A DNA stretch of 64,000 nucleotides, taken from Takakia lepidozioides. Lineage: Eukaryota > Plantae > Bryophyta. The DNA is taken from contig CM060731.1 in NCBI GenBank assembly GCA_030704615.1, positions 96,100,001 to 96,164,000 on the forward strand. The letters run 5' to 3'. The position numbers and the translations under genes were made by a program. The notes beneath the pieces are model-generated. The model saw nothing but the letters and a program-made list of their open reading frames with translations, ran no database searches and was not told the DNA's origin. Of the stretch, positions 34,301 to 59,056 are shown piece by piece. Positions within the stretch are counted from its first letter, which is position 1, and the number at the start of each line of letters is the position of its first letter.

Positions 34301-37300
34301 GCTTATACCGGAGCAGTCCATTTTGCAAGTGGAACTGCGATTTAACCCCCATCCTCAAGTCCTGCATTACGGACTTCGCCAGCTCATCCTTCCGGCAAGC
34401 CTTCTGGATCTTCCTTTGGAGCGCCGTCTCGCCCCTGTACACCAACAACAGTTGCTGCTTTCTACTTAAAGCATCGGCCACCACGTTGTCCCGTCCCGGT
34501 TTGTACTGGATATCCACGTCGAACACCGCCAAAGTATCTTGCCACCTAAGTTGTTTTGGGGACAACTTGGGCTGCGTGGCAAAATACTTCACCGTGACAT
34601 TGTCCGTGAACACCTTCACTGGGTTGGAACCAACATAGTGGCGCCAAAGCTCAAGACAGTGCACCACCGCCTTCATCTCTTTCTCGTGCGTCGGCCACCG
34701 TCGCTCCATTTCATTCAGTTTCTTACTGTCGTAAGCCACTGGACGACCATCTTGCATCAGTACACCCCCAATCGCGAAGTCCGACGCATCTGTATGAATC
34801 TCGAACGGACGATTGAACTCCGGGATTTTCAAGACTGGAGCTTCCGCCATCCGCTGCTTCAATGCAGCAAAAGCTTGGCCACAAAAGGTGTTCCATGCCC
34901 AGACTTTGGACTTACACAGAAGGTCTGACAGTGGCCCCGCGATCTTGGCGAAATTTCTCACATACTTCCGGTAATAGGAGGCGAGTCCTAGGAAGGATCG
35001 CACTCCTGGGACCGAAATCGGAGGCTCCCAGTCCAAGATTGCCCTCACCTTCCTGTCATCCATTCTGATCCCAACCTGTGTAATCACATGCCCCATGAAC
35101 TCCACTTTTGTGACCCCAAATTTGCACTTTGAAGCTTTGGCATACAGCCTCCCTTCCCGCAATTTCTAGAACACCCTTTTGAGGTGCTCCAGGTGCTCCT
35201 CCTTTGTTTCGAATACACCAAGATGTCGTTGATGTACACGATCACAAAGTCATCCAACCACTCCTGGAAAAGGCTGTTCATCAGCGTGCTAAAAGTCGCG
35301 GGAGCGTTGGTGAGTCCAAAAGGCATCACCAAGAACTCATATGAACCATATCTTGTCTTGCACGCGGTCTTCTCCTCATCTCCTTCCGCCACTCGAATTT
35401 GATGATAGCCGGAGCGCAGATCGATCCGGCTGAAATACTTCGCTCCTGCCAACCGATCGAAAAGGTCGTCGATCCTTGGCAAAGGGTACCGGTTTTTGAT
35501 AGTCATCTTATTCAAAGCCCTGTAATCGACACACATCCGTAGCGTCCCATCCTTTTTGTCTGCGAATAGCACCGGGGCTCCGTAAGGTGATTTACTCGGC
35601 CGGATGTACCCCTTTGACATTAGATCTTTGAGCTGAGTCTTCAGCTCGACCAACTCTTTGTGGCTCAACCGGTAGGGCACCTTGGCAGGCGGTTCCGATC
35701 CCGGTATCACCTCAATCTTGTGGTCAACTCCTCTTCGCGATGGCAAACCGCTTGGTAAATCCTCCGGCATCACATCCTGGTATTTCTCCAAAATCCCCTT
35801 GATCCAATCTGGGCTCGGCTCCCCATCGCCTTCTCCCTTCACTTCTCTAATATAGAGCAAAAACTGGGGCTCGTGTGCCTCCTCCACGGCCCACTCCCTT
35901 GCTGACAGGAGGTTTATTCACCCTCCCACGGGTTTGGGCGTTTCCGACACTTGTAAGACCTCGCCACCATTCCCACATGGCAGCGTGACTACTCTCTTGC
36001 GGCCATCTATGACCGCTCCGGATTTGCTCAAAAAGGTTATCCCCAAAATGAGATCCACTCCATTGATCTCGCAGATGGTGAAGTTCTCACGTCCCTCCCA
36101 ACTCCCCAGTTGAAGAGGAACATCAAACGCCAACCTTGTCGCCAATTGCGGTTCTCCTTTGGCAGAACGCACCTCAATAGAGGCCCCCACGTCCCTTGTC
36201 GGGAGTCCCAGCTTTTGTGCCGTTGCCGGTGTCATGAAGGAGTGCAACGCTCCTGTGTCCACCAACAACGACATGTTAGTTCCGGATATTATCCCATCCA
36301 CCAACAATAACTGACTCCCTTTACGTAAGGCACCAGTTTCCTGATACAACTCACAAGAAAATTTGCCTACCTTGCAAGTCCTGGCGACCACCGCTTCCAC
36401 CAAGCGACTGATGATATCTTCCGACAGCTCTGTGGTCGCCCGAGTCATGTTCAATTGCCGGGGCTTCGTGCACTTCTTGGCCATGTTCCCGGGCTCCCCG
36501 CAATTGAAACACACTCCATCAAAGGTCGCATTTTGTCCGCCATAGGCCGCTCCACCCGCTTTTCCTTTCGAAGCACCGGGTGCCGCCTTGACTTGTGAAG
36601 GCCCTCCCTTTGATTTCCACGTGCCATTGTCGCCGCGTGGCCTATCCCACTTCTTTTCCGGTCAGAAGGAGTCAACTTCCCTCCGGGGCTTCTTGTGGTT
36701 CAGCTCCGTACGGCCTTGTCTTTCACCCTTAGGGACATCCGAGAAACATTCAGCCCTCTCAATTGCCACGTTCAAAGTCTTAGGTGGCTTCTCCTCCAAC
36801 TTCTGCCTGGCCCGTGGGGCCAGTCCCGCCACAAAGTTGAAGACCATTTCAGGTTCTGCCATGTCCGCGACTTCGAGCAACAACACATTGAAGGCTTGGA
36901 CATATCCCCGAATGTCATCTGTTTGCTTCAAATTCCTCATCTTGTCTCGGGCGAGCCAGGACGCGTTGAGGGGCACAAACTGCCTCTTCATCAATTCCTT
37001 GAACCCACTCCAGTTCAAGGTTTCCGGGCTTGGACCTCGGTCATGAAGGCGTTTCTGCCACCATTGTTGAGCATAGCCCCTCAAATAGGTGGGAGCCACT
37101 TCCACCCGATCCTCGTCACTGAACTTGGCCGCCCGGAAGTACTGCTCTAGCCCCAAGAGCCAGGTGTTGAGTGCCTTCCGATTTTCGGACGCCCTCGAAG
37201 GTGCCGGGTTCCTTAGGCTTCACCTTAAACTTTGCCTTAGTGGAAGTGGCATTAGCCGCCTTCAACACGTCTTTCAACATCCCGCCAAATTGCGCCAACA

Positions 37301-38307
37301 ACCCTTCCCAAAAGGCTGCCGGCATGGGAGGCATCTGTTGGTCGGTCGGAGCTCTCAGGGATTCCTCAGGCTCTGACTCCTCAGATTCCTCCCGCTCTTG
37401 AGCGGCCGCGTTTTCGGAAACATGCATCGCTTCCTCAAACGGCCGCCTCGGTGACACGTCGCCAACGGGCTCACCTGGATCATCATCTTTTGGGCCGTTC
37501 CGCTTTCGCTTTGGCTTGCCCGACCCCATGATGAGGCCAATCCCAAGGACGATCGCGTACTGAACTCTAAGCTCTGATACCAAGTGTCGCGCACCTCACT
37601 TCAATAAGCCCCCCCCCCCCCCCCCCAAGTCATAGTTACTCGCTTGATGCGCGTGCCTAACTCCCAACCTGGCTGCCGGGCCAACTTGGAGCTCCTGCTG
37701 CTCACCGGGGCATAACAGTCCCCCTTTGATCTCCCAAAGAACCCTCCAACGCTTTGGAACCAGCGGAATTCCCTTTGGTCCGGAACAGCTCCCCACTCTT
37801 TGGTCGCTTTCCGGTTCGCTCGCTTACTCATTAGTTTTTGGGCACCAACGGGCTTGCACCGTTCTCGGGGTTACTACTCCCTATATATACTTATGTAGCT
37901 GTCCGCCGGGGTTTCACAAACAACCATGCCATTTTATGGCGAACCACCACGAATACCCTCGACTCCCGGTGATGAGTCGCGGTGAGTCTTGGCCCACCCA
38001 CCACGGCCCCTATGGACCGTGATGAGTCCCAAGACTCCCCACGACTCCCACCACGAGGTCTCCGCCCCAGGGTGAGTCCTATGTCACCCCCACTAAGTCC
38101 CGCTAAGCTACCACCACCCCTTGTGGAGCCACCCCCACCGCAACCCGGTGTGCGGGGCTCCACCTAGTGAGCGCCTCCGCCTCCTTGAGTGCTTTGGGCA
38201 CTCAAGGGTGCTTCAGCCCCCCATACCTATCGCTGCCACTGCCCCCACCAGAGGGGCAGCCCCTCTTGTGTCCCGACCCCTTGCCCTCAAGGCAAAGGGC
38301 CGCGACA
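31339..38307 (-). mobile_element. Full-length chromovirus copy A2
   Basis: LTRs at 37585-38307 (5') and 31339-32062 (3'); TSD CAATT (31334-31338 / 38308-38312); PBS at 37571-37582. The LTR pair is more diverged than in A1. Confidence 0.96.
32970..37529 (-). pseudogene. gag-pol of A2 with CGA>TGA stops and frameshifts
   Basis: Collinear with A1. RT YIDD is mutated to YIND; the RH-INT-chromodomain stretch (730 aa) is open. Confidence 0.92.
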
Positions 38308-39506: not shown

Positions 39507-42500
39507 GAGGTTTGCTATTTCATGAGCATGAGCGGCATGAGCGGCATGAGCGGAGTAGTAAGACAATCGGTTTTCATGAGCAGAAGTACAAATTTCGAAA
39601 ATAAAAAACAATAAAAACAATATTTTAATGCAATGTGTCAGGAAAAACAAATATATTATTCGGCCCCTTGAAGGGAAACTTGCAGTTTTGACAGTTGTGC
39701 TCATGATATTTCGTCTTCCGCTCATGCCAATTCCCAGCGACATGTGCAAATATGGCGCCGAATTTCGCGGTAATAGGGTCCGTAACTTGAAAAAACGGCG
39801 ACGTATTTCGCGGTAATAGGTCTCTCTGGCGAAAAATGGTGCCGAATTCCGCGGCTATAGGTCCCCTCATGACAGGTAATTCGGCACCATTTTTCTAGTG
39901 CATGTTCGGACTTAGCCAGTTTTCGGCGCAAAATAGGAAAATTCGGCGCCATTTTTCCAGACACTGTACCAGTGCATGTTGGGACTTAGCCAGTTTTCGG
40001 CCCAAAAAAGAGAAATTCGGCGCCATTTTTCCAGACACGGTACCAGTGCATGTTGGGACTTAGCCAGTTTTCGGCCCAAAAAAGAGAAATTCGGCACCAT
40101 TTTCCCAGACACAGGTACCAGTGCATGTTGGGACTTAGCCAGTTTTCGGCCCCAAAAAGAGAAATTCGGCGCCATTTTTCCAGAAATGGCCCCACAACTG
40201 CTTCTGTTGGATCTCAGTTTGAATGGAATATTGCCTCATTCCAGGAGTTTTGGGGTGCATTTCATTACACTGCAAAAAAAAGTCTGATACAGCAAAATGC
40301 AATTGAAAATATCCATATGGAGGATTCCCTTTGCCCCATCAATGATTTCTGGAATCCCTAAGGAGGAGTTTGTGCAGCTCGTTCACGCTCAACGCCGGTG
40401 CATGAATAAAGTCATCAATAGTCACGTTCATCCTCAACCTCTTCAGGTAAATGTAATACAGATGCTTGCACGGATAATACTTCGAACCCTTCTTTGCTTC
40501 CATCAACGAGAAGTCCGTACAATTGCAAGTCGGCTCCACTCCAATCGTAATTGTGTATACATCGTCGCGTACAACCGAGCCGGCCGTTGCCATCCGATAC
40601 ACACGCCCAAGGCCGGGTGGGGGTACGTCCACGGAGCTCTGAATAGTGCAAGCCATCCCAAGAGCATTGGCAATCCGAGTCTCATTCAACTTGTTGGGAG
40701 GGTGTCGTCTCTTCACTCTTCCGAATCGCATTGTGGGATGTGCAGAATTGTCCAATCCGTCTCTACTGGACCGAGCAGTCTGCAATGGCTGGGTCTGAGG
40801 AACCGGAAATGCGTGGGCCGGGATGTCTGTGCGTTGCACCATTCGAAATCCTGCTGCAGATAGAGCATCCGCCTCATTCTGAGAGAGACTGCAACCCGGT
40901 GCAACAGGCCAGACGCCCGGAGGCTCCGGCATTCCCTGAATCCCGTACTTGGGCTTGCCAAATACACAGGTCATTATGTCGTGCCTACAGAACCAAAATG
41001 TTTGCGTTGTGGCGTGAGCAAATGTGGGAGTCAAAAATCTGCCGCTGAAATAAGGTGCAGGTACTGCACCGTGTGGGTTCCTCCGAATCATCTCACCACA
41101 GCGTGCTCTCGTATCCACCCGGATGGCGCAGCACTTCCCTTGAAATGCCGGCAATGTCCTCACAATTCTCCACTGTGACTCCGACACTCTTGTCTCCACA
41201 ATGGGAATGTTGTATTGCTTTACTACAGATGGCTCGTTATGTTGCCGGGGCACGCGCCTTGTGCTCGAAGGAGATGGCGATCTTGAACGTGCAGGACTTG
41301 CGGTGCTCGACGAGACCTCCTCGAGCAACATCACCGGACCACGAGGGAGCGTGCGAATATTCTTGTCAGCTCGCCATGAATCCTCTTCTCCGCCAGGTGC
41401 CTCGTCAAGTCTTCGTCTCACTGGACGGGTATGAACATCTCCTTCCAAATGTTGGCATCTTCGCAGCAATGGCGTGTCCCGAAGGCCCTCTCGCAAGGCC
41501 GCCGCCCACTTCCAAGGATTCTTCAATCTAGAGGCAGTCCGCATCAGCATTTCCTGCCTGTCCGGCCCCAAGCCCCACTGTTTCCCTTTCAAGAACTCGT
41601 TGTACCTGCATTGCTGCATAATTGACCTCACAATGTCCTCCGTTGTGGCAGTGAGGATGTCCACCAGATGCGCCGCAGAGGAGGCACGTCAGGAAGAGTG
41701 CACTGATTCGGCCATGTTTGTCGTGGGCATGTCGGTGTTGGAGTCGAGACACATTTCCTGCACAAGCACATGTTGAGGTTACAAGCAAGTTACAAATATG
41801 GCCAAGAATAATATTCAACGGGACGCGAATTCGTGCAACTCACCTCCCGCATATAGTCGCCGAACTGGAGGAAACGATAATGCCACCATGCTAGCCAACT
41901 GACCATTGCTCCCTCGTCTGATTCCTTACAGCACCTGACGATGTCCACCAAGCCCGTATGCATGCAAACTGTGTCTCTGCATCATCCAAGGTGGGAGCGC
42001 GCTTCCACGCAAGGCACATGGAACGGTGCTCCTATCTGAAATCTGGCGCCATGAGCCTGGTTGTGTACTGCGAAAGGCTCTGCAGAAAATGGAACCCACA
42101 AGATCTCTCCTTGCCTTCCATGGGAACATTGGGGTCTTGCCCGTACACCCTTCGGATGGCAGCCCAATTTGCTTGTGCATTGTCCGCCATGAAACCACGG
42201 AAATTGGGAGGGGGCAATCCCGCCTTGGCCATCTGTTCGTTTATTCCCTGCCAAAGAAGCATCTCCGATTGTGTGTCCTCTCCTTTCATCTCACAAATAG
42301 CAATTGTCATTAGCATCCTGCAGTGGGTGTCGTAGACATGTGCACCCATTGTCACCCACTGGTGATTTGTAATTCGCTTGATATGGTCGAACATGACCCA
42401 ACTGTTTGACAAGTTCCCACTCGTCATCCTGTCGACCAGTTCGACGCCGCTGCCAGGTCTACACGTGGACATTTTGAATACGAAACAACGATCTGCCTTA

Positions 42501-43183
42501 GTCCCTTGTCCTGGAAACCTACTTCCATGAATGTAGTCATATCCACATCGTCACTTCACCTCCAGAATGGAGTGCATATCCGAGCCACGCCCAATTTTCT
42601 ATTTGCATGAGACAATGTGGTTTCGGACATTCGGTGAACATACATGGGACACCGACTCCAGCAATGCCTCCATTTCCTTCTCGTCGAGAGGAACTCTATC
42701 GGAGCCGTCTTCCGACATAATTCTAGCCAATGCCATCTTATGGGCGGCTTGGAGCTGTATCTGTTTGGGTTTGGCACCCGGTCTCAACTTAACCTCCTCC
42801 TGAACGAGCTGCTCTGCTTCGTGGGCAGCCTCTCGCGAGTTCCCCCTCGCCAATTTGTGACAATGGGAACCAACGTGTATGCAAGCTCGGGTGAGGTCAG
42901 GGAAACGGTGCAACACATAGAACTGCTTGGCATTACAAATAGACATGCAGTGTGGTGGTTCTTTGCAATGCGCACACTTAAATGTGGAGTTCGGAACCTT
43001 CTCCTGAGCTCGAAATGGTTGGTGAGCTGTGCCTGTCCAATCGGTCTCGTTCCTGTGACCTCTGGATTTAAAGTGGAAGCAAGTTGGGGAGAAACACCGC
43101 AACGCGCCCGCACAAACAACGTAGTGCACCCGCACACCATCGAGCATCTTCATGCTGGTGGTTTTGGTAACGCACCAAGGATG
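39507..43183 (-). mobile_element. Second, truncated M2 copy (right TIR, subterminal repeats, 3' part of transposase)
   Basis: Near-identical inverted copy of about 27649-31244. Transposase pseudogene at 40339-43183 with stops at 42032, about 42551 and 42599, and an intron at 41758-41843. Cut in the DGH|PWC motif by a family-B LTR. Confidence 0.93.
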
Positions 43184-45368
43184 TGTAGTGTGAAAAGAAG
43201 GGGCGTGAATCCCCTTCTGTATAATTCTAATTGTGCTCCCCTCCATTGATTGCGGAGCAAGAGGAAAGAAGCGTTCTTTCTAATCTGTCCAACTGTCGTC
43301 ACTTGGCTGTGGGTTTCCCTTAGCTCCTCCGTGATCAGAGTTCAAGCAATCCTCATCCACGCCGCAGCGGAAGGGAAGACATGGATGGGGAGTCAATTTG
43401 TTGTTCACTCTTGGTTCTACCTTTTACACAACATCCCCTATCAGCAGGTACAGCACCAGCTATGCTGGTGCGATGTATTCAGTGATGCAAATCAGCCCAA
43501 TGGCAGCGGTGAACACGATCCTTTATGTGAAGCCCACTTGAGCAGTGACAGGTCAAAAATCCCCTTTTTGTAGTGGTGACACAGATTTAGGAGGAGGCAG
43601 CTCAGATCTTCATGGTCTGCAGTGGCACTGGTTTCTTTCAGGTTTTCTTCATCTTATCTCCCCAAATTGGCCAAACCCCCCCTTCCAACAGCCCTTTTGA
43701 TTTGCAGCTCTCTCCTCACCCAAATCCCATTTTTCACTCTCTCTCTTTCTTTTTCCTTTTTGTCTGTTTCACTATCTCTGTCTATGTCCCCAGGTTCCCC
43801 ACTATTTCACAGCAGCAGATCTGTCATGTAATGTGAATGCACACGCTGCTAGGCATCCAGTGCGGCCAGCCTTGAAGTCATCCTCGGTCTCTCAAGACAC
43901 AACCATCCCATCCATCAGTCTCTCTCTCTTTCTCTCTCTCTTGTCCCTTTTTCCAATGACCCATCGCTCAAACAGCTCTCATCTCTTTTGTCAGACTTCA
44001 ACCCAAATACCCCAACATCCCTCTTTTCCCTTCAACTGTGGAACACAGTTGTTCAGATCCTGATCCCATAGTGAAATCACCTTATCCTTTCCATGTTTTT
44101 TTGCAACTCCAGCTAACCATCATTGATCTCTCCAAACAAACAAGCCAGATCTACATTGGTTCCAGGTTATCACTACACACGGCAGCATGGTGTCCAGGTT
44201 TATGACACTGAATCAAAATGCAAGAATGAAGACAACAGTGACCATTCTGAATTCAGTGACGAACAGGCTCTCTCTTTCTCTCTCTCTTCACTTATTTCTC
44301 TCACTGTCATCACAACATCAGGTGCATCCATCCTTTCCACGTTCTGGTCTGAAGTCCAGAGTCTCCATTCCCATTTCAAAAACTTTTTCTTGTCACATGT
44401 CTCTACCTTTTCTCTTCTGCCAAGATGGCAGTCCTAAATCTACCAAAGCAATTTCTAAGTCTTGGCAAAAAGAAGCCTCTGTTCATCGACTTATCTGTTT
44501 TTATCCACTAGTGAAGCGGCGGGTCTGCCTGTCAAGGTGGCACCTTGCCATCGCCCGTCAGCAGCCACTTCAACCCTTTCTCTTTGTCTTGATTCCAGAC
44601 CTTATGACGCCATGATGGCTCCCCTTCTTCACTTGGACCATCCTGTGGCCTGACAACCAGATTACGCTATGCAATTCTTCCTCTCGAATTGGCCTGGTCC
44701 TATAACAAGGAGACACAAAGCAGCTAGAAGCTTAATGACAGAGAACCTGAGATACCATACAGCCAGAACTCCACATGCTTTACCTCCCCCCCATTGATTG
44801 TGTCCAGACTCTCTTCCCTGTGCTTTCAGCAGCTGGCCTTTTCCTTGCTTGCTCATCTGCCCATAACTATCATCTTCAAGGCACTGGCGGCAGTGGTGGT
44901 GCGCCGCTTTCCTTACATGCTTCTATCTCTTGGAATTGATCATCACTACGAGAGAGGCGGCACCGCTTCTTTCTACACAGAATACCAAGCAGAGGCGTCT
45001 TAATGCCGCTTCCTAAGCCAAGCAAGATCCCACCGCGCAGGTACAACCTCCTAACACAGGCTGCCCTGCCGACACCACTGCTTGCAACAGCCGCTACGAG
45101 CCATCCGTCATCTTCCTCTTCGTTTTTCTCAACCCGCGATCTTTTAGGTCAAGAACCAGTGATGAAAACGTTCATCGCATGGATGAAAATGTGTACCGTC
45201 ATGACTTAGCCATTTTCTCCTGGCAAAGCATAAGTTCAGTGCGCTCATGAAATTACCTCATGAAGGGATACATCCTTTCTGCAGTTGGGATGACGGGCAC
45301 TCCGTCATAGTGATGTAGGTCGTAATGGTAAACATATGTAATGTTCTGTCCCCTGCATTCACACTACA
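43184..45368 (-). repeat. 3' LTR of family B (2185 bp)
   Basis: 11-bp terminal inverted repeat TGTAGTGTGAA…TTCACACTACA, with the PPT just outside. Confidence 0.88.
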
Positions 45369-45388
45369 TATGTAGTGTGTCTCCCTTT

Positions 45389-48300
45389 TTAAGTGTCAGG
45401 GTCCTCACTGACCACCTTCACTAGCTGATCACACACTGGTGGTACGAAGGGTTTCAAGTCCCTCCTACTTCTTGTCCATTCCTTGTTTGCCCCATCTCTT
45501 AGCCTGCATCTGCGTGCAGCTTCCCCTGTCCTTGTGGTGTTTCCTGCATCTTTGTACCCCAAAAAGTCATAAGGTCCCTCCCATGGAGATGTCATGGAAG
45601 ATCTCTTTCCAGGCCTCAACATCATAACCTTGCTGTTTTCCATCAACTTGCAGTAGGTATGCCCAGTTTGATGCCTCCTTTCATAATCCCTTGCCTGCTG
45701 CCGCTGCCCTTTCTTCACACTTTTTCGCAGCTTTGCCTTCATCTCTGTGAGAAGCTGGATTTTCTGCTGCATCATAAGTGTGACCTCTGCTACAGATCCA
45801 TCAGAATTTACTGGTGTTGTAAGAAAATGCAACCTGTTGTCAATTCCCAGCCTTGGAATTCTACCAGTAAGTACCTAAAAAGGTGAGAATCCAGTGGAAG
45901 CATGGACACCCATTCTGTAACCAAACAGGGCCTTATAGAGATTCTGATCCCATTCAGTGTCGTTTCCAACTCCTAGGGTGGTGATGCTCTGTTTGAGAGA
46001 CTTAATGACCCTTTCCACCATACCGTTACACTGAGGCCAGTAGGGGGCGCTATGCTCCCTCTTTATACCGTATTCGTGGCATGTATCTTCAAACTCACCT
46101 CCCCACTCTGTGCCATTGTCAGTGAGCAACGTATGTGGGCAGCTATACCTGTCAATTACTTCTTCCTCAAGAAAGCGGGCAGCAAGGGCTGCTGTATGAT
46201 CTGCCACTGGTGCAGCTTCTATCCATTTTGAGAAGTGATCGATTGCCACCAGAAAGTACTGATTGCCCCTGCTGGTTATAGGTAATGGTCCTGCCGTGTC
46301 AATTGCAACTCTGAAAAACAGATCTACTACTGGAATGCTGTGAAGTTTTGAGCTACCTGAGCGCAACACTCCGTTCTGTTTGGCCATCTGACATTTACCA
46401 TAGCCCTTGAGAACTTTCCTGATGAGTTTTGTTCTATCATGCCAGAAATAATGTCGGCATATCTCCTCTTGAGTTCTTCTGACTCCAAAGTGGCCAGTGG
46501 CTTCATGTACTTCACTGATTATTGCCCCTCTATCAGTTCTTGGTGGAACTACCCTTCCATCAAAGTAGACCTCACCTTTGAGATAGGAGTACTGCCTTGC
46601 CCGCCTCTTGGCTCTCGTGCTCTCCTCTTTTGTCAGGTAGTCATTGACTTCTCCAAAACATAAGAGGTGCATGACTTCCACATCATCAAGCACATCAGGT
46701 TGCCTTTCCTCCTTAACAGCTGCTGTATGCTGGTCAGAGCTGATGAGAGAGCTTTTCCCCCATCTTTCAGCCTCACGTAATAATGACATCTGAGTAGCTT
46801 TGGTGGGTGCGGTCCATGGTACCCAGTCCCCTTCATCAATCTTGTTGCAAGAAGAAGTGTCTGGTTCTGAACCACTTGTTCCATCACTGTCTGAAGAACA
46901 AAACGTCTTGGTGGAACACTCACCCCCCATGTTTTCCTTGGCTGGGCATTCTGATGAGGAAGTCACCCGCGTTCTTCTTGTAGTTGGAGTGCTTGTCAAG
47001 TCTTGAAGGAATGGTGTCTCTTGCAAGCTTCCCTTTTCATTGTTCGATCTCTCTTCCACAAGTTCACAGGCTGGATGTACCTCGCTCAGCTCCTTATCAC
47101 GAGCACGAGATCCTCGGGTAATACATGGATGGTGGGACAAGAGGGCATCAGATGCTCCCTTTCCTTGTTGCTGATTGCAGTAGCCTCTTTCCTTCCTGCA
47201 CCCTTATCCTTCCAAATACCCTCCCTTACCAGATTGACAGAGCTTGATTGATCAATACCCTTTCCTTGTTTTTTTGTAGCAAAAGTCTGTGCAGCAAAAG
47301 TCACCCTCTTTCCTTCTCCATCTGGCATTATGCCTGGTTTCAGTTCTCCCTTCAATATGCCATGATCCTTGGTCAACATTCTACCTGTGGAAGGTCTTAC
47401 TATGCCCGGAACGAACTCAAATGAAAAGTCACCAAGTAAGTCTATGCCTATGTGGTGCTCTGAGTACAGCCACCAATATGGATCTAGATCTGTTTCCAAA
47501 GAAAAATGACTTCCCAACAGTATTTTCTTGAAGTGCCAAAGGCCCCATACACATGCATAGTACTCTTCTCTTTTGCAAATCATCTCCCCTTTTTCACTGC
47601 TATACCCTACTTGCCTATGAGCTTCTTCTCTCAACTCCTCCTTACCCTCCTTAAATTGAAATAACGAAGCATTGATGGCACCCCTATCCCAAGCTAGCTT
47701 AAGAAGATAGGCTCCATCCCTCTTTCTCCCTTCTCTTTTCTGACTGTACAGAGAAGTAGAGTATACCTCGATTTCCTCGGTTTCCTCAGCTGGTCCCACT
47801 GGATACCTGCTTAGTGCATCTACGTTAGCATGCCTAGCACCTGCTCTGTGAACAATTTTAAACTCAAAATCTTGTAACATCATGATCCATCTACCCCTGC
47901 GTCCATATGCGTCACTTACCGTTGCCAACCACTCCAGTGGTTTGTGATCAGTCCTGATTACAAAAGGGGTTCCATACAGGTACTGCCGAAAGTGTAATAC
48001 TCCCCACACCAGGGCATAGCATTCACCTTCCATAGGGTGATATTTGCGCTGAGCATCAGATAGTACCTTACTGGCGTATGCAATGACCCTCTCCTTTTTA
48101 TACTCCTTTTGTGACAAGACTGCCCCTACTCCTTTGATGGACCAATCAACATCCAAGACGAATGGTCTTGAGAAATCTGGTCTTGCCAGGATGGGAGCAG
48201 TTACCAACTTCACCTGTAAGGCAGAAAAGGCGTTTTGTGCCTCTGCACTCCAGATAAACTTCACATCTTTTTTGGTTAGAGTGAACAACGGTACTGCCAC

Positions 48301-50664
48301 TCCAGCATATCCTTTGACATAGGGCCTATAATATCCTGTCATGCCTAAGTAGCTTTTGAGAGCAGTGTGGTTTTTTGGCAAGGGAAACCTTTCAATAGCA
48401 GCTATCTTATCTGGATCAGGCCACGTTCCCTCTTCAGAGATCACATGCCCAAGGAATACCAACTGTAAGTTGGCAAAGTAACACTTGTCCGGATTGAGCC
48501 TAAGATTGGCCTTTCTAACCTTGCTCAATACTCTCTTTATATGTCCCACGTGATCTCCCCAGTCCTTGCTATGGATATTGACGTCATCTACAAAAACTTT
48601 AGCGCAATCTTTGATTTCTTCCTTGAGAACCCTATTCATCGTTCTCTGAAAGGTAGCAGTGGCATTTTTTAGCCCGAATGGCATGACTAGCCATTCATAC
48701 AATCCCTTCTTTGTGATCACTGCTGTTTTGCCTATGTCTCGGTCGTCCATTTTGATCTGCCAAAAACCAGATTGTAAATCCAGCGCAGAAAACCACTTGG
48801 CTTTCCCCAACTGGTTTAAAACATCCTGAATCAATGGCATAGGGTAAGAGTCCCTTCTGGTTAAACGGTTTACTAGCCTAAAATCACCACAAAACCGCTT
48901 GGATCCATCCTTTTTTGGTGGAAGGGTAACTGGACACGACCATTCTGAGCTACTCTCTCTCATCTTGCCTTGTGAGATCAAAGTCTCAATTTGTCCTTGG
49001 ACCTCGTCTTCCTCCCATTCTGATAGGCGGCTGGGACGACTTCTGCAAGGGGGAAAACCTTGTGTGTCAATTGTGTGTTCCACCTCACTGCAGTATCCCA
49101 AGTCAGCCTTGCTAAGAGCAAAGCATTCCTGGTTTGCTTTCAGCTCTTGTTCCAGCTCTATCCTATGTTCTGGGGCCAGTTCTGGGTTGATGTGCAGTCT
49201 GGATTTCAGACTTCTCCAACGACTCTCCATTTCTTCCTCTTGACTGGGTTCCCAATTTTTTTTTTTCACCTGGCTTACAAAGTTAGCCATTCTCTGTCCT
49301 TCCTCTTGTGTGACAACCTGATTCCAATCATGGAAGTCATCCTCTATTTCTAGGTTGTTGTTCCCTAGTTCACCATTCCAAGCTTTCTGGTAAGCTTCCT
49401 GTATTATGGCAGCAGCCATGCTCTTATGGGTCTCTTCCTGAAGGAGTTCAGACATCCCTTGGTCCTCGAACAAGTCCTCCCCTAGGTTGACCTCGTCTAT
49501 TATTTCCTCAACATCCCTCAGTGCTGTTTCTACCTCCTTACTCTCCTCAGAGCCTCCCATCTCCTCATCTTTATCAGATTTAGAGGTGTCAGAACCTGAG
49601 GATGCTTCCTCCGTGTCCTCATATTCTTCCTCTGGTTTTCTTTTCTTCTCCCACAAGCCTAGGTACTGTTCATCTGACGTCAGGGTTAAGACATTACCTG
49701 CTGACGTACTGCTTGCATATCTCATTCTACTCTCAACCCCTCTATGGTAGGCTGTTTTGGTAACTGCAGGCTCATTATAATTGATGGTGTGCAAAGGGAA
49801 GTGAGCAAAATCCTTTCCTGGCCCATAGCGTACGCGAATTGTTTCAGCTTCGGTGTCCACTACAGCGCCAAACTTTTTGAGAAAGTCTAATCCCAGCAGC
49901 ATGTGATATGTATCCGTGTTCACCACCATAAAGGACAAACGATTGGTCAGTTCTCCTACTTTGACCTTGATGTCCTCAAGTCTGCCCATTGCAGTCTCAA
50001 GAGCACCTGAGGCTACTCTGTAATTTACATCCTTACTAGTAATGACAGATCCCATCAAACCAAGATCCCTGACTGTACTAGCTGATATTACAGAAAGCAT
50101 GGCACCAGTGTCAATCTGGCCTAATACTTGGTAATCTCCCATTGTAATCATTACATGAAGCGCTTTAACCTTACCTGTATAAGCATACAAGATCGTGGGC
50201 TCAGCGTGTGCTGAGTACAAAGGCCTTGGTACATCCTTCACAACTTCTACACTGTGAGTTGTCTCCCTTTGTTGGACCATTGCTCTTTCCACCACTTTGA
50301 CCAGCCCTTTTAATTTGTCTAGCTCTCCGGGCACAGTCATGATCAGGTCCATGGGTGACAACGATATTCTCCCTTTGTAGAAGTGGTTCAAGATTCTGGA
50401 TTTTGTACCTCCTTCTATAGCATTCTTGAAATTGTTCTTTGGGTAGATTTCACTCTTGGTCTTGCTTGGCTGTTCACTGCTCTCACTATTCCTTTCTGGT
50501 GACCCTGTAGGTTCAACAATCGGACTCTGGACAGGTATGCGTGTCCTTGGAAGTCTGACTTCATTGATACTATTTCGTGACATCAGATCTGTCATCTCTG
50601 CGAGTACATCATCCTCATCATCATAGAACACATCTACAAAGTTAGTTCCCGGAGTTCCCATCAT
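45389..50664 (-). CDS. Family-B pol (PR-RT-RH-INT), interrupted near 47100 (frameshift) and 45875 (in-frame stop)
   Basis: IDTGA; LDLQSGFWQ; FVDD; DVDWS…TDHKPL…DALS; HEATGHFG; IDTAGP/TDNG/VERV. Confidence 0.92.
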
Positions 50665-51500
50665 AGTCTAGTTTTTCTACTGCACTCACTCTCCGTATGC
50701 CCGAGTAGCTTGCAAAAGTTGCATCTCACACCACACATTTCCGTGGAATGCCCGAACCGGTGACATTTGTCACACTTAGCTGGGGTTCTTCCTTCAGGAC
50801 AATATGCAGCTATGTGACCTTCTTTGTGACAAACATTACAAAGGCGAACACGAGGTGGTGTTCTAGATCCCGAGCTTTCTCCTATGACTGGTCCCCTATC
50901 AAAGTACTTCTGTAGGGTAGTGTTCAGCTGATCAAGTCTTCTGTCCACAGGGTTAACAAACACAACTGACTCATCTATATCATCTCCTTCCAATGGCTCT
51001 AGAGGTATTTCCCCTAACTTTCCCAGGCCCCTTTCAATCTCAATGGCTGTGTCAAGTGCTTCCTCTACATCAAGGAAGCGCCTGCCCAGCATTACTCTTG
51101 CTATTTCTGGTCTGAAACCTGCTGCAAATCTACGCCTCTGTTCCAAATCAGACGCCCCACTTCTTATAAATAACCGGTTCAACCTATCGAAGTATGTTTG
51201 AACCCTTTGTCTACTCTCCTGTTTAATGGTATCCATTCTTAGCCTAATTTCTGCCAAGTCAACGATACCAAACTTGGCTGAAATTGCTGCCCTAAAGTCC
51301 ACCCAGTTGTTTGGTCTAGGGTTTTGTTTACGGTACCATTCATCAGCCTTGGCTCTCAGGTTGAGCCTTGCTACCTTGAAAGTTTTGTCCTCATTCAAAT
51401 CCCTGACATCTGCCTCCATCTGAATCCTCTCCAGCCAGTCATTTACATCCTCACTATTCCTACCATGATAAGGCGCATCTATGCTGGTTGGACTGGTCAT
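50661..51500 (-). CDS. Family-B gag with three CCHC knuckles
   Basis: Capsid-like W..R…LRAKADEWY…W.DF…F; CNVC…H…C, CDKC…H…C, CNFC…H…C. Confidence 0.9.
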   Translation of the reverse strand: MTSPTSIDAPYHGRNSEDVNDWLERIQMEADVRDLNEDKTFKVARLNLRAKADEWYRKQNPRPNNWVDFRAAISAKFGIVDLAEIRLRMDTIKQESRQRVQTYFDRLNRLFIRSGASDLEQRRRFAAGFRPEIARVMLGRRFLDVEEALDTAIEIERGLGKLGEIPLEPLEGDDIDESVVFVNPVDRRLDQLNTTLQKYFDRGPVIGESSGSRTPPRVRLCNVCHKEGHIAAYCPEGRTPAKCDKCHRFGHSTEMCGVRCNFCKLLGHTESECSRKTRL

Positions 51501-51571
51501 CCTTCTATTCTCTAGTCAAAGTTCAAACTGTTTCAACACCTAATTCTGACTCTAATTTTCCTGCAACTCCC

Positions 51572-51895
51572 TTAATGTTGACCTCTATACCACTCCCACT
51601 GTCCATTTCGCAACATCTCTACTCTACCTCCCCATGTCACCTCTCGTGCCATGGTATTTATCTTCACCCACCTTCCTAACTCTCTTATCCAAAGTGCTAT
51701 GGTTGTTCTTCCACCAGTATGTATCACTCTAAGACATAAATCACCATTCGCTATTCTCCAAGCAGGGTTGAAGAAGTACAAACAAGGGTCTGCGTGTGCA
51801 TTTGGTGTGCGTCTGCTGAAGCAAATCAGCACATCTCCAATGCTTGGTTCATCAGGAATCAGTGTGTGGTCTCTTCCTTCCATCAAACCATCCAA
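51572..51895 (-). CDS. Extra 107-aa ORF between PBS and gag of family B, unknown function
   Basis: ATG-initiated, sense strand, fills the leader; no domain recognised. Confidence 0.45.
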   Translation of the reverse strand: MDGLMEGRDHTLIPDEPSIGDVLICFSRRTPNAHADPCLYFFNPAWRIANGDLCLRVIHTGGRTTIALWIRELGRWVKINTMAREVTWGGRVEMLRNGQWEWYRGQH

Positions 51896-52366
51896 TACCA
51901 GTCAAGATCCCTAGCTAGTAGAAATCAAGATTTAACAACGTAGCTCTGATACCAAAAGAAGGGGCGTGAATCCCCTTCTGTATAATTCTAATTGTGCTCC
52001 CCTCCATTGATTGCGGAGCAAGAGGAAAGAAGCGTTCTTTCTAATCTGTCCAACTGTCGTCACTTGGCTGTGGGTTTCCCTTAGCTCCTCCGTGATCAGA
52101 GTTCAAGCAATCCTCATCCACGCCGCAGCGGAAGGGAAGACATGGATGGGGAGTCAATTTGTTGTTCACTCTTGGTTCTACCTTTTACACAACATCCCCT
52201 ATCAGCAGGTACAGCACCAGCTATGCTGGTGCGATGTATTCAGTGATGCAAATCAGCCCAATGGCAGCGGTGAACACGATCCTTTATGTGAAGCCCACTT
52301 GAGCAGTGACAGGTCAAAAATCCCCTTTTTGTAGTGGTGACACAGATTTAGGAGGAGGCAGCTCAG

Positions 52367-55300
52367 GTCCAACAAAGTCTAGTCCCCATTTCTGAAATGG
52401 TTCCGTAGGCATTGTAGGATGCAAAGACATTTTCCCAGATCTCTGCAAAGGTCCCAGCCTCTGACATTCATCACAACTCTGACAATACTTGTGTACATCT
52501 TTGAACAAAGTAGGCCACCAGTAACCTGCATGTAGTATCTTCCTACTGGTAGTCTCTTCTCCAAAATGACCTCCAGCCACTCCTTTATGAACTTCCTCCA
52601 AAACTTTATTTACTTCATGGTGGTACAAGCATCGTTTTAGTACTCCATCAGGTCCTAGCTTATACATTCTGCTTCCTACCATAGTATAAGGTAAAGCTTT
52701 GATAGCGATTCTCTTCCTCTGCTCCTTACCATAACTAGGTGGGCACTGACCATGAGCAAGGTAGTATCTGATTGGCCACTGCCAATCTAACCAGTCATCT
52801 GCACTTCCCAGCACCTCCACTGCAAATAGACTCGCATCTGGTAATTGATCATCTATTCCTGTGGCTGGTTCTCCTGTTGATAACCGTGACAAGTGATCCG
52901 CCACAAGATGCAGTCTCCCAGGCTTGTAAACAACCTTGAACTCAAACTCGTGCAAGATTATCAACCATCTTGCTATTCTTCCGCTTATCAGAGGTTTATT
53001 TACCAGGTATATCAGAGCCTGGTGATCCACATAGAACATAAACTTCTTGCCCAACAGGTAATGCCTGAATTTCTTCACTGCATAGATCATTGCCAATGCT
53101 TCTCTTTCCGTTGTGCTATAGTTCCTTTCAGCACTGTTCATCAACCTGCTAGCATAGTACACAGGTGAATCTATATTTCCTGTAACATTCTGGGCTAACA
53201 CCGCTCCCAACGCTTCTCCTGATGCATCGCAGTGAACATGAAATACTACATGCCAGTGAGGGTTAATCAGCACAGGTGTAGTTGTTACTGACAGTGTAAG
53301 TTCCTCAAACGCCTGTTGACATTCAGCTGTCCAGGCAAACACTGCATCTTTCTTCAGTAGCTTGCTCAATGGTGCTGCTATTTGTGCATACCTTTTGACA
53401 AATCTTCTGTAATAACTGGTTTGCCCAAGGAATCTCCTTAGACTCTTAACATTCACTGGTGGTGGAGAGGCTTTAATGGCCTCTGTCTTCCCGGGATCCA
53501 CAAGAAGTCCCCTCTTACACACAATGTGTCCCAGAAGCACCCCTGAGTTCACACAGAAAGTACACTTATCTGGATTCAGGCCCAGACCTCTCATCCTGCA
53601 TCTGGCCAGACATAACTCCAATTTAAAAAGTGCTCATTCTTAGAGCTGTACACACTGAAATCATCCAAGAATACCTGCATGAAATCATCCAGATACTCAT
53701 GAAAAGATTCACTTATCACTCTCTGAAAGGTCGTTGGTGCATTACAAAGTCCAAAGGGCATGACTTTGTATGCATAAGCCCCCAGTCTGTGATGAAAGCT
53801 GTTTTTCCTTGGTCTTCTTCTGCCACTTGCACTTGATTATAACCACTGAAACCATCCATGAATGAGTACATCTCATGGCCTGCCACAGTGTCTAATACTG
53901 CTTCTGTGAATGGCAAAGGGAAAGGATCTTTCTTCGTACAAGCATTCAGCTTCTTGTAGTTCACACAAACTCTTAGTTTACCATTCTTCTTGGGAACTAT
54001 CACAATGGGTGACAACCAAGTTGTATACTCTATTGGATATATAAACTTAGCCTCAGCCAACTTCTTGATCTCTTCTCCAACCTTCTGTGCGTAGTTGGGA
54101 TTCATTCTATACCTTGCCTGCTTGATTGGTACTGACCCTGGTTCCAGTTCAATCTTATGCTGACAGACTTCAGGTGGTATTCCTTTTAGATCCTCATAGC
54201 TCCAAGCAAATACATCTCTGTATTTGATGAACAAGCTTTTAGCTTCTTCAAAGAATTCCGGCTCCAAATCAGCTCCTACTTTCACCATCCTCGGTTCCTC
54301 TTTAGTTCCCACATTCACTTCCCTCACCTGCTCATCAGCTGTGATTGTCCAACCAGTCACCACTTCATCCTGTAAGCTCACAGTGGCTGGTTCTTCTAGG
54401 ATTTCTATTTCTCCTTCTCTTTCTTCATAGAAATGTGATGGGTAAATGCTGGTTTCCTCTTCAGTTGGTGTTACTGTCACTACACCACAGCAGATACCTC
54501 TCAAACAACTTAGGCTTTCCAGCCGCATCTTTGCAACCTGCTCCCACTCTGGGTGTGCAGCAAATAGGGTAGCTTCTTGTTCCTCATCCAGTCCTCCTTT
54601 CCAGTCATACTCTCTGACTCCTCGAGGTCTTCTTGTAGCAGGTAATCTACTAGATTTCTTTGTGGTAATTTGTATCTCGTGTATCCCATTATGCACGGTT
54701 AGTAACTGAGAATTCCAGTCATGGAATACCCTGGCCTGTTTCAGCCACGGACGTCCCAATAATAAGGAGTAAGCCTCCATGACTTCATCCATCTTCAACA
54801 CAGTTACTGTGATCATAAAGATCATCTTCTGTATCTGTATCTTAACTCCTCTTATCAATCCCAATGGCTGTACACTTCTTTGATCTGCCATTGTTATTGT
54901 AAATGGGGCTGGTTTCATGTTACTTAGACCAAGCTTCTTCCTTAATTGGTCTGTCATGATATTCACTCCAGAACCTCCATCTATCAGTACATCAGTTAGT
55001 TCTGTGCTTCCAATTCTCAATTGGATTACTGACATAGAATCATCAAAGTCCATGACTGTTTCTCGCCCTTCCGGCTTCACATTATAACTGGTCACCTTGC
55101 TGTTCAGGTCTGTGTTTCCTGTCTCCTGGGCAATTTGATTGATTGCTTGATACAGCCTGTGCCTACAATAAGGTGCCACAGCTAATAGCTGTCCAATGGT
55201 AATCTCTGCTTTGGTTTGGCATATTACTTCAGCCAAAGTCTCTTCATTACTTTGCATGTCTGCATCTTCTTTCTTCCTTTCATCCTCACTCCCTTCTTCT

Positions 55301-58130: not shown

Positions 58131-58829
58131 TCAGTTCCCCAGTATGGTCGCCAAATGTCGCGCGGCTTTTACTCACCCATCCCTTCGCTATCCGAGGCGG
58201 AAACTCCAAGATAGAAGAGTTGGAAATCTCTAAGTACTCAGCCCGTGCAGAACAATCAGTCATGACCTACAACTAGTGTATCATGGGGGTGTTTCCTATT
58301 TGTTTCCCTTTTGGCATTCATGTTAGCTACCTTACCATTGATAATTAAGTATCAGTTTGCTTTATCAATCTATTGGATTCCATCAACTCATCCATTCATT
58401 CCACAGCTTCACTCAGATCTCTCTACACAGTGTGATTGTATCGTATAAGTATCCGATTATGATTTATCATGTATCAGGCCGAAGCCATTGTGTCTCTAAT
58501 CTGCTCTACAATATCACTACAGTTTTTCATATAGAAAGCATCTACTAATCATCTCTCCTCCTTCACCGTGCTCTCCATCTTTGCTTCCGTTCTTACTCTC
58601 CGCCCGTTCCTCTCTCTTGCATGACCAAGAAGTCCTCCCCCACCAGTGCCTCCAAGAATAATCCCCCCAAAAAGCCCCCTACTCAGTCCTTGCTTCTCCC
58701 TTTATCTTCCTACCCGTGGCTCTAACCGTTTCCCTCACTAACCGTCGTCCGTGAACTAACATGTTCCATTTGCAGGTGTTGTTCCCCACAGTCGTTCCCT
58801 GTCCTGCTCTCCGTTCCCTATGATCGTGA

Positions 58830-59056
58830 CAGCTGTGTCAAGCTGTGACTGGCTGTGTGAAACTATGACGGGCTGTGATTGGCTGTGTGACTGTGTTTGG
58901 CTGTGTCGGGCTGTGACTGGCTGTGTGGCTGTGTTGGCTGTGATGGCTGTGTCGGGCTGTGACGAGCTGTGCTGACTGTGTCTGGCTGTGTCGGCTGTGA
59001 CGACTATGACGGCTGTGACGGGCTGTGTTGGCTGTGTCGGCTGTGACGGGCTGTGT
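58830..59056. repeat. (GGCTGTG[T/A]N)n 9-10-bp minisatellite inside the family-C LTR
   Basis: Visible reiteration; a shorter version occurs at about 9665-9730. Confidence 0.9.

What the first reader, a model, noticed from the sequence alone, without database searches (positions are those of the whole stretch)
43184..52366. Gypsy element with a relocated attachment site: signature of integration through a circular intermediate
Seen (element strand): the 3' LTR ends CCCCTTCTTTT-CACACTACA|host, but the otherwise identical 5' LTR stops at CCCCTTCTTT and runs straight into the PBS TGGTATCAGAGC with no CA end. The missing 9 nt lie right after the PPT: AAAAAGGGAGA-CACACTACA-TA-TGTAGTGTG, a perfect 20-bp palindrome at 45360-45379. 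Known: linear cDNA ends are set by the PPT and PBS, and each end normally carries its own att. Inference: reverse transcription here gives a cDNA with both att sites at the left end and none at the right. Joining the ends and cutting at the central TA reproduces the observed genomic 3' end to the base. This suggests that circularisation, or an equivalent end-to-end template jump, followed by integrase cleavage is required, which is not the standard LTR pathway.
Basis: partly seen in the sequence, partly recalled or inferred. Interest (0 to 1): 0.85.

Follow-up and report, generated by a model that had tools for sequence, protein, structure and literature searches.

The report
Gypsy retrotransposon with relocated end site
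This plant (bryophyte-type) Gypsy retrotransposon, like its relatives in mosses, keeps the sequence of its right integration end next to the polypurine tract and not before the primer-binding site, so the inserted copy cannot arise from an ordinary linear cDNA and the two cDNA ends must first be joined and then cut at a small palindrome.

Summary
The element lies on the minus strand.

- **3' LTR:** it ends ...CCCCTTCTTTT-CACACTACA at the host border (43184).
- **5' LTR remnant:** 413 bp, 100% identical to the 3' LTR. It runs straight into the tRNA-iMet primer-binding site with no CA end.
- **After the PPT:** the missing 9 nt sit there inside a perfect 20-bp palindrome (45360-45379).

This is a lineage trait, not a one-off. 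I found the same layout in relatives from other genomes (gag 41-46%, RT 53-63% identical). One complete copy (L020) is ATAG | TGTAG...CTTTTT | PBS ... PPT-GGTTACA-TA-TGTAG...CTTTTT-GGTTACA | ATAG, with a 4-bp target duplication. Two copia elements and a distant gypsy in the same window are conventional.

Because U5 is copied from the 5' LTR, the terminal 9 nt can only come from the copy beside the PPT. The U5 end must therefore be joined to the cDNA's left end and then cut at CA^TA. A 2-LTR circle cut by integrase is the simplest route. That route is inferred, not shown.

This copy is 5'-truncated and fused to another gypsy's integrase, and its pol is broken. The scan noted the same logic before on other DNA of this genome. 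The literature has one figure-legend remark (Klebsormidium, 2018).

The parts
43184..43192 (-). B2: terminal 9 nt CACACTACA of the 3' LTR (the right attachment end), at the host border
   Evidence: Empty-site contigs break at 43183|43184.
43193..45368 (-). A2: body of the 3' LTR (2176 bp). It starts TGTAGTGTGAATGC at 45368 and ends CCCCTTCTTTT at 43193.
   Evidence: One Logan contig (X2 record 6) leaves the reference exactly at 45368; unitigs start at 43193.
45369..45370 (-). Central TA of the palindrome, the proposed staggered cut site (CA^TA on both strands)
   Evidence: The same ACA-TA-TGT core is found in relatives.
45371..45379 (-). B1: CACACTACA directly after the PPT, the only copy of the right end that is present in the RNA
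45360..45379 (.). Perfect 20-bp palindrome (B1-TA-start of A2). It looks like a pre-formed LTR-LTR circle junction.
   Evidence: 0 expected by chance. As RNA it folds into an 8-bp hairpin, z = -3.7.
45380..45390 (-). Polypurine tract AAAAAGGGAGA, overlapping the TAA stop of the last pol ORF
45389..45832 (-). C-terminal pol piece (147 aa, no Pfam domain, no chromodomain)
   Evidence: Relatives were found with it.
45875..47140 (-). Integrase piece (zinc-binding H2C2 domain plus DDE core). It is separated from the next piece by an in-frame stop and from the RT piece by a frame change.
47086..50664 (-). Protease, reverse transcriptase and RNase H ORF (1192 aa)
50661..51500 (-). gag ORF (279 aa) with a CCHC zinc knuckle. 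It matches no Pfam family and is 41-46% identical to the gag of relatives.
51943..51954 (-). Primer-binding site TGGTATCAGAGC (tRNA-iMet type), directly abutting U5
51955..52366 (-). A1: remnant of the 5' LTR (its last 412-413 bp, 100% identical to the 3' LTR). It has no CACACTACA at its end.
52366..52367 (.). Breakpoint: the truncated 5' LTR is fused to integrase codons (...KWGLDFVGP) of an unrelated, conventional gypsy element (Y, 52367 to about 58160)
39507..43183 (.). Host flank: a copy of a Mutator-like element (98% identical to 27649-31244, inverted) into which the gypsy element inserted
   Evidence: The empty site is seen in Logan contigs.

Best explanation
This is a Ty3/gypsy LTR retrotransposon (gag-PR-RT-RH-IN, tRNA-iMet PBS, PPT). 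It belongs to a bryophyte-associated lineage whose right attachment end has been moved.

Write the LTR body as A and the short block ending in CA as B (9 nt here, 5-7 nt in relatives). Integrated copies then read: TSD-A-PBS-internal-PPT-B-TA-A-B-TSD.

Reverse transcription as set by the PPT and PBS gives a linear cDNA B-TA-A ... PPT-B-TA-A. Its right end (a pyrimidine tract ending ...CTTTT) has no CA, and its left end carries both inverted end sequences as a palindrome.

To give the observed insertion, the U5 end must be joined to the left end. The simplest route is blunt ligation into a 2-LTR circle. The integrase then cuts the junction palindrome after CA on both strands (CA^TA). This yields a linear molecule TG...CA with 2-nt 5' overhangs, which is inserted with a 4-bp target duplication.

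**Shown:** the layout, its heritability across a lineage, the TSD, and the impossibility of the standard route.
**Inferred:** the ligated circle, and cleavage by the element's own integrase.

The copy in the window is young (LTR remnant 100% identical) but defective. Its 5' LTR is truncated and fused to another element, and pol has one frame change and one stop.
For: **Element type**
- Pfam domains in gypsy order.

**Layout in the window copy**
- Both junctions and the palindrome.
- The host border of B2 is fixed by empty-site contigs from 3 runs of 2 samples.
- Contigs of independent samples cover the PPT-palindrome-LTR start. Summed depth in that bin is 5-10 times that of neighbouring bins, and no well-supported contig lacks the 11 nt.

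**Relatives**
- L020, a complete element: ATAG|TGTAGTGTGAA...CTCTCTTTT|TGGTATCAGGGC ... AAGAAGGGAGG-GGTTACA-TA-TGTAGTG...CTCTTTTT-GGTTACA|ATAG.
- L009 (NCBI assembly GCA_965154135.1): U5|PBS without B; PPT-GTTACA-TA-TGTAG; 3' end TTTTTT-GTTACA|host.
- L018: PPT-GGTTACA-TA-TGTGAC and 3' end CTTTT-GGTTACA|host.
- L022 and L023: LTR-collapsed contigs reading PPT-B-xA-A...U5|PBS, with no B before the PBS.
- L011 (Ceratodon purpureus) and L010: PPT-xxACA-TA-TGTGAC.

**Controls in the same window**
- Two copia elements and gypsy Y have LTR...ACA-2nt-TGG and PPT-2nt-TG.

**Enzymatic precedent**
- PFV and HIV-1 integrases cut palindromic LTR-LTR junctions (PMC1180852, PMC1905944).
Against: - No circle-junction read, eccDNA or linear-end data: the laid contigs list no U5|B-TA-A joint (contigs drop rare forms).
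- A 2-LTR circle holds two identical palindromes. Nothing here shows why only the junction copy would be cut.
- Blunt ligation is normally a minor, imprecise side path.
- The left end and TSD are missing in the window copy. Only one relative (L020) has both ends.
- The 5' LTR/PBS junction of this family itself was seen in one copy only; support for it comes from relatives.
- In L009 the T run before B2 is one base longer than predicted.
Confidence: 0.65

Rival explanations
1. Same layout and the same need to join U5 to B, but the join is made by reverse transcriptase. On reaching the 5' end of the minus strand, the plus strand jumps end-to-end onto the 3' end of the minus strand (the left end) and copies B-TA. 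This resembles the circularising template switch of caulimoviruses and hepadnaviruses. The result is a linear or open-circular DNA whose right end is A-B-TA, and integrase then does ordinary 3' processing.
For: The integrated structure is explained equally well. The U5|B2 joins seen are precise to within 0-1 nt in four elements, which would be unusual for end-joining. Circularising template switches are established for the sister group that uses the same tRNA-iMet PBS (my knowledge).
Against: No terminal redundancy or microhomology between the U5 end (...CTTTT) and the sequence at or before B that could guide a jump. The left end would still need an 11-nt endonucleolytic trim. No data on cDNA ends.
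Confidence: 0.22
2. One-off rearrangement or assembly artefact of a conventional element: a 9-bp deletion at the LTR/PBS border plus an 11-bp insertion after the PPT.
For: The locus is rearranged (truncated 5' LTR fused to another element). Only one copy of this family is in the window.
Against: It needs two exact indels in a copy whose LTR remnant has no substitution. The same two junctions occur in relatives from other genomes, including a TSD-flanked copy. Independent runs carry the palindrome next to the PPT.
Confidence: 0.02
3. Standard linear integration, with the terminal block coming from elsewhere: from the target site, or from copying the first bases of the tRNA/PBS at the right end.
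For: In L020 and L018 the block GGTTACA resembles the PBS start TGGTATCA (5-6 of 8 bases), and the boundary is ambiguous by up to 3 nt.
Against: In the window copy CACACTACA is unlike the PBS and matches B1 at 9/9. In every element B2 equals B1 exactly (6-9 nt) and fits B1 better than the PBS. Empty-site contigs show the block is not host DNA.
Confidence: 0.02
4. Integration or amplification from multimeric or tandem cDNA or tandem genomic arrays (A-int-B-TA-A-int-...), cut or recombined so that one unit plus an extra LTR is retained.
For: Tandem units would also contain the U5... no, only A|PBS and PPT-B-TA-A joints; the idea is considered because LTR-collapsed 'circular' contigs exist (L022, L023).
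Against: Tandem units do not contain a U5|B joint, so they cannot supply the observed right end. The collapsed contigs are ordinary assembly products of two LTRs.
Confidence: 0.03

Closest known systems
KnitGypsy-Dnmt3 of Klebsormidium nitens (de Mendoza et al. 2018, PMC5890265, Fig. 4c legend)
   Same: A DDE-integrase Gypsy element whose repeats are laid out A-coding-B-A-B 'as in a DIRS retrotransposon'. This is the only published remark on such a layout in a Gypsy element that I could find.
   Different: No Dnmt3 domain here. B is only 9 nt (5-7 nt in relatives), so the element passes for a normal LTR element. The paper gives no mechanism, ends or TSD. Phylogenetic relation was not tested.
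PAT/Ngaro/DIRS-type tyrosine-recombinase retrotransposons with split direct repeats (A1-B1-A2-B2)
   Same: Same repeat logic: the RNA is not terminally complete, and a joined (circular) cDNA restores the unit.
   Different: Those elements encode a tyrosine recombinase and make no target duplication. This one encodes a DDE integrase, and its relative has a 4-bp TSD.
Cleavage of the palindromic LTR-LTR junction of 2-LTR circles by retroviral integrases (PFV: PMC1180852; HIV-1: PMC1905944), and the older circle-junction model of integration
   Same: A CA-NN-TG palindrome formed by the two LTR ends is cut after CA on both strands, giving 3'-processed ends. The sequence after the PPT here is exactly such a junction.
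   Different: In retroviruses each linear end carries its own att site, and the circle is at most a side route. Here the linear right end has no att site, so a junction would be obligatory. There is no biochemical evidence here.
Conventional Ty3/gypsy and Ty1/copia elements (for example the two copia and gypsy Y in this window)
   Same: Same genes, the same tRNA-iMet PBS, a PPT, TG...CA ends of the integrated copy, and a short TSD.
   Different: Conventional elements have LTR...CA-2nt-PBS and PPT-2nt-TG...LTR. Here the right inverted repeat plus its 2 nt lie after the PPT.
Caulimoviridae (plant pararetroviruses)
   Same: Sister group of gypsy elements, the same tRNA-iMet PBS, and circular DNA made by RT template switches (my knowledge).
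   Different: They have no integrase and no LTRs. The element here has both.

Membership tests
Ty3/gypsy (Metaviridae) LTR retrotransposon | gag plus pol with the domain order PR-RT-RNaseH-IN | tested here: met
   Pfam hits in that order on the minus strand. CCHC knuckle in gag.
Ty3/gypsy (Metaviridae) LTR retrotransposon | Direct long terminal repeats, with a PBS after the 5' LTR and a PPT before the 3' LTR | tested here: met
   413-bp remnant 100% identical to the 3' LTR. PBS at 51943-51954. PPT at 45380-45390.
Ty3/gypsy (Metaviridae) LTR retrotransposon | Both LTRs complete and identical at insertion, each ending in the CA inverted repeat (as standard reverse transcription produces) | tested here: not met
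   The 5' LTR lacks the terminal 9 nt and the 3' LTR is preceded by an extra copy. The same holds in L020 and L009.
Ty3/gypsy (Metaviridae) LTR retrotransposon | 4-5 bp target-site duplication | tested here: inconclusive
   Not visible in the window copy because the left end is lost. The relative L020 has ATAG on both sides.
Split-direct-repeat retrotransposons (DIRS order: PAT/Ngaro type) | Repeat layout A1 ... B1-A2-B2 | tested here: met
   A ... PPT-B-TA-A-B, with B = 9 nt
Split-direct-repeat retrotransposons (DIRS order: PAT/Ngaro type) | Tyrosine recombinase in place of a DDE integrase | tested here: not met
   rve plus Integrase_H2C2 found; no phage-integrase domain
Split-direct-repeat retrotransposons (DIRS order: PAT/Ngaro type) | No target-site duplication | tested here: not met
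   4-bp TSD in the relative L020
Gypsy elements with DIRS-like repeats (KnitGypsy-Dnmt3 type) | A-coding-B-A-B layout in an integrase-bearing Gypsy element | tested here: met
   Paper legend read.
Gypsy elements with DIRS-like repeats (KnitGypsy-Dnmt3 type) | Dnmt3 domain in pol; shared ancestry with the Klebsormidium elements | tested here: not met
   No DNMT domain in any ORF. Ancestry was not tested, as no sequence of those elements was at hand.
Integration through a cut LTR-LTR circle junction | Palindromic CA-NN-TG junction made of the two end sequences | tested here: met
   CACACTACA-TA-TGTAGTGTG at 45360-45379. ACA-TA-TGT in relatives.
Integration through a cut LTR-LTR circle junction | Existence of the U5|B joint in extrachromosomal DNA and its cleavage by the integrase | not testable with these tools
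   Only Logan contigs were available, and no such joint is listed.

The most novel reading that the evidence does not exclude
A whole lineage of DDE-integrase LTR retrotransposons in bryophytes uses the joined LTR-LTR junction (a 2-LTR circle or its RT-made equivalent) as the obligatory integration substrate. The linear cDNA, the universal substrate of retroviruses and LTR elements, is a dead end until its ends are joined. The length of the relocated block varies from 5 nt to hundreds of nt among lineages of the same genome.
Probability: 0.5. Interest if true: 0.9.

Novelty: new variant of a known kind. Interest (0 to 1): 0.77.

Why it matters
All textbook models hold that integrase acts on the two ends of a linear cDNA, each with its own att site, and that 2-LTR circles are dead-end by-products. 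Here is a natural, high-copy lineage whose inserted structure cannot be produced that way.

- **An old question becomes testable.** Can a circle junction be a real integration substrate? A plant system would allow eccDNA sequencing, cDNA end mapping and integrase assays on a 20-bp palindrome.
- **TE annotation is affected.** LTR finders that expect two identical TG...CA LTRs will misplace the borders by 9-11 nt and miss the asymmetry.
- **It links two groups.** It bridges DDE-integrase elements and the split-repeat tyrosine-recombinase elements.
- **It makes predictions.** Expected by-products are one-LTR insertions ending PPT-B, and solo A-B units with TSDs that did not arise by recombination.

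Tried and rejected
- **Other copies in the window:** none. Only a 70-74% similar LTR fragment at 9933-10730.
- **Exact 20-mer in JGI metagenomes:** four chance hits, unrelated.
- **gag against the protein collection:** no hit.
- **Whole pol:** only 28-41% relatives. Their contigs either had no DNA or no LTR pair (L005-L007).
- **L011 (Ceratodon), L012-L017, L010, L008:** fragments. The PPT side is readable but the 3' end is not definable.
- **IMG/VR scans with RT and IN alignments:** only L022 and L023, which are LTR-collapsed contigs without host borders.
- **Logan contigs:** short unitigs, with no raw reads. They cannot show RNA ends, circle junctions or copy number, and most loose ends were not listed.
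- **Rejected ideas:**
  - B2 derived from the PBS (the window copy contradicts it).
  - A jump of RT across a U5-tract/PPT stem (it would delete the pyrimidine tract, which is retained).
  - Cohesive pairing of the PPT primer with the U5 tract (wrong polarity for a head-to-tail circle).
- **Not done:**
  - No chromodomain or other Pfam domain was found in the C-terminal pol piece, so I could not name the gypsy clade.
  - No complex or structure prediction was run, as none would bear on the claim.

Full report
**1. What is there**

The stretch is a Ty3/gypsy element on the minus strand. Its ORFs, from 5' to 3':
- gag, 50661-51500, with a CCHC knuckle.
- Protease, RT and RNase H, 47086-50664.
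- Integrase, 45875-47140.
- A 147-aa C-terminal piece, 45389-45832.

Pol is in three pieces. There is one frame change near 47086-47140 and one in-frame stop between 45832 and 45875, so this copy is not autonomous.

The 3' LTR spans 43184-45368. Of the 5' LTR only the last 413 bp remain (51954-52366). They are 100% identical to 43193-43605. At 52366|52367 they abut integrase codons (...KWGLDFVGP) of a different gypsy element, Y. Y shares only 28-37% of its pol residues with this element. The left end and the target duplication of this copy are therefore lost.

**2.

On the element strand the sequence reads as follows:
- PPT AAAAAGGGAGA (45390-45380), then CACACTACA (45379-45371), then TA, then TGTAGTGTGAATGC... 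at the LTR start (45368).
- The 3' LTR ends ...CCCCTTCTTTT-CACACTACA at 43184.
- The 5' remnant ends ...CCCCTTCTTT and runs into TGGTATCAGAGC.

The 20-bp palindrome is unique in the window, with none expected by chance.

The host border is independently fixed. The flank 39507-43183 is a copy of a Mutator-like element, 98% identical to 27649-31244. Logan contigs of three runs (two samples) carry the uninterrupted version. They leave the window exactly at 43183|43184 and continue with the sequence found at 27630-27648. So CACACTACA is element DNA, not host DNA.

A nuance on 'to the base'. The 3' LTR has four T before CACAC. The 5' side has three T plus the T of TGG. The fit is therefore exact if the first PBS base belongs to the cDNA end. 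That is what retention of the tRNA's terminal rA gives in HIV-1 (my knowledge).

**3. Is it a one-off? Evidence from reads**

Only contigs (short unitigs) were available, not raw reads. They show:
- Unitigs that begin at 43193, the branch point between ...CACACTACA and the PBS.
- Two contigs of another study (X6) with foreign sequence abutting 43184.
- One diverged contig (X2 record 6) that follows the LTR start up to 45368 and then leaves it, as a 5' LTR border would.
- Several contigs across the PPT-palindrome-LTR start, from different samples. Summed depth in that bin is 5-10 times that of its neighbours, and no well-supported contig lacks the 11 nt.

This argues against an assembly artefact and for many copies that share the palindrome.

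**4. Is it a one-off? Evidence from relatives**

gag and whole-pol searches gave nothing close. The C-terminal pol piece and an RT piece did find relatives, and I fetched their contigs. lines up the junctions.

- **L020 (= L021):** a moss-like metagenome contig; gag 41% and RT 56% identical; LTRs 95.6% identical. It holds a complete element:
  - left flank ...GTCATAG | TGTAGTGTGAAATT...
  - ...CCCTCTCTTTT | TGGTATCAGGGC (the PBS, with no CA end before it)
  - ...AAGAAGGGAGG-GGTTACA-TA-TGTAGTGC...
  - ...CCCTCTCTTTTT-GGTTACA | ATAGGAC.
  - So it has a 4-bp target duplication ATAG, a start TGTAGTGTGAA like the window element, and the short block only after the PPT and at the very end.
- **L009:** NCBI assembly GCA_965154135.1; gag 43%, RT 53%. 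It reads U5 ...CTTTCCTTTT | TGGTATCAGAGC; PPT-GTTACA-TA-TGTAGCC; 3' end ...CCTTTTTT-GTTACA | CTATG. Its 5' LTR lacks the first 109 nt.
- **L018:** PPT-GGTTACA-TA-TGTGACC and 3' end ...CTCTTTT-GGTTACA | CTAG. The 5' part is missing.
- **L022 and L023:** IMG/VR contigs that are LTR-collapsed. They read PPT-TGACA-TA-TGTAAC ... CCCTCTTCTTT|TAGTATCAGAG and PPT-TTACA-GA-TGTGAC ... CTTTCTTT|TGGTATCAGAGC. Again no block precedes the PBS.
- **L011 (Ceratodon purpureus) and L010:** both show PPT-xxACA-TA-TGTGAC.

By contrast, two copia elements in the window (2153-9096 with TSD ATATC; 31339-38307 with TSD AATTG) and gypsy Y are conventional. They have LTR...GCGCGACA-CT/TT-TGG... and PPT-TA-TGTCGCGG.

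The relocated end is therefore a heritable trait of a lineage (RT 53-63% identical to the window element). It is not an accident of this locus.

**5. Why the standard pathway fails**

In standard reverse transcription both daughter U5 copies are templated by the parental 5' R-U5. Both daughter U3 starts are templated by the sequence after the parental PPT. This is established for retroviruses and LTR elements.

With this layout the linear cDNA is B-TA-A-PBS...PPT-B-TA-A. Its right end is a pyrimidine tract without CA. The only template for the terminal block of the integrated copy is the PPT-adjacent one.

In each of the four elements with a readable right end, the terminal block equals the PPT-adjacent block exactly (9, 7, 6 and 7 nt). 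In the window copy it is unlike the PBS, which rules out a tRNA-derived end. Some step must therefore join the U5 end to the cDNA's left end. A cut after CA on both strands of the B-TA-A palindrome then gives TG...CA ends with 2-nt 5' overhangs, and a 4-bp TSD follows.

**6. How the joint is made is not shown**

- **Blunt ligation into a 2-LTR circle** is the simplest route. It has enzymatic precedent: PFV and HIV-1 integrases cut palindromic LTR-LTR junctions (PMC1180852, PMC1905944).
- **An RT end-to-end jump** would give the same product. The joins are precise to within 0-1 nt, which suits it. I found no terminal redundancy to guide it.

An open problem for both routes is that the internal PPT-adjacent palindrome is identical to the junction one. 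Only the outer flank differs (purine tract versus pyrimidine tract), and that may be what the integrase reads. If both were cut, one-LTR units and free A-B units would result. These are testable by-products.

The U5|B2 joint is never inherited. Its variability among copies is therefore a direct readout of the joining mechanism.

**7. Known or new**

The library search found no paper on split or permuted LTRs in integrase-bearing elements. [quoted passage not shown]

The scan itself has met the logic before on other DNA of this genome. Follow-ups s1-447756, s1-446157 and s1-469576 describe long-B permuted LTRs around a CAGCTG palindrome in a clade of algae, mosses and liverworts. First-reader notes s1-476350, s1-474064, s1-460834 and s1-488572 describe the same miniature signature elsewhere. 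I did not see their sequences.

What I add:
- A minimal-B lineage (5-9 nt, ACA-TA-TGT core) that passes for a normal LTR element.
- Independent confirmation in other genomes, including a TSD-flanked copy.
- Conventional controls in the same window.

**8. Limits**

- One family copy in the window, and it is 5'-truncated.
- One complete relative.
- No raw reads, no RNA ends, no circle junctions.
- The gypsy clade could not be named: no chromodomain or other domain in the C-terminal piece.

Noticed in passing
window 52366|52367: The 5' LTR of the element is cut down to its last 413 bp and fused in-line to the start of the integrase core (...KWGLDFVGP) of an unrelated conventional gypsy element (Y, 52367 to about 58160; PBS TGGCGACCATAC after ...GCGCGACA-TT). 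This could be a deletion, a recombination or a chimeric cDNA; I did not resolve which.
   Followed up: partly
window 43193-43205 and 51955-51967; L020 6738-6750; L009 5346-5358; L022 153-164; L023 935-946; L018 6240-6251: In all six elements of the lineage U5 ends in an 11-13 nt polypyrimidine tract (CCCTCT(T)CTTTT-like) directly before the PBS. It is roughly the reverse complement of the element's own PPT. It may be the flank that lets the integrase tell the junction palindrome from the internal one, or an RNA 5'-3' pairing.
   Followed up: no
L020 13863-13866, L009 12395-12398, L018 6259-6262: The 3' flanks of three relatives begin ATAG, CTAT and CTAG, which hints at a target preference for a TA-centred site. 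The window copy's flank is CATC.
   Followed up: no
window 39507-43183 versus 27649-31244: Two inverted copies (98% identical) of the end of a large Mutator-like element. The gypsy element sits in one of them. Logan depth for this flank is far higher than for the gypsy LTR, so it is a very abundant repeat.
   Followed up: partly
window 2153-9096 (+) and 31339-38307 (-): Two copia elements of one family with conventional ends (TGTCGCGG...GCGCGACA, PBS after CT, 5-bp TSDs ATATC and AATTG). The first one interrupts an LTR of the Y-like family (2080-2152 and 9097-10730).
   Followed up: partly
window 9933-10730 and 9099-9730: An LTR fragment is a mosaic. One part is 70-74% similar to the LTR of the element studied (43795-44614). 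The neighbouring part is 74% similar to the 5' LTR region of the conventional gypsy Y (58226-58888). Either LTR segments are shared between lineages with different end layouts, or the fragment is a recombinant LTR.
   Followed up: no
L018 300-530: The relative in L018 is 5'-truncated next to plant-type telomere-like repeats (CCCTAAA variants).
   Followed up: no
L022 1-123 / 7079-7201; L023 1-98 / 7723-7820: Two IMG/VR 'viral genomes' with terminal overlaps are LTR-collapsed assemblies of retrotransposons of this lineage. They are not circular viruses.
   Followed up: yes
window 16324-16823: A 500-N assembly gap. Next to it, 16825-17019 is 89% similar to the C-terminal pol region of the element (45723-45915), so a second copy of the family may be hidden by the gap.
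   Followed up: no
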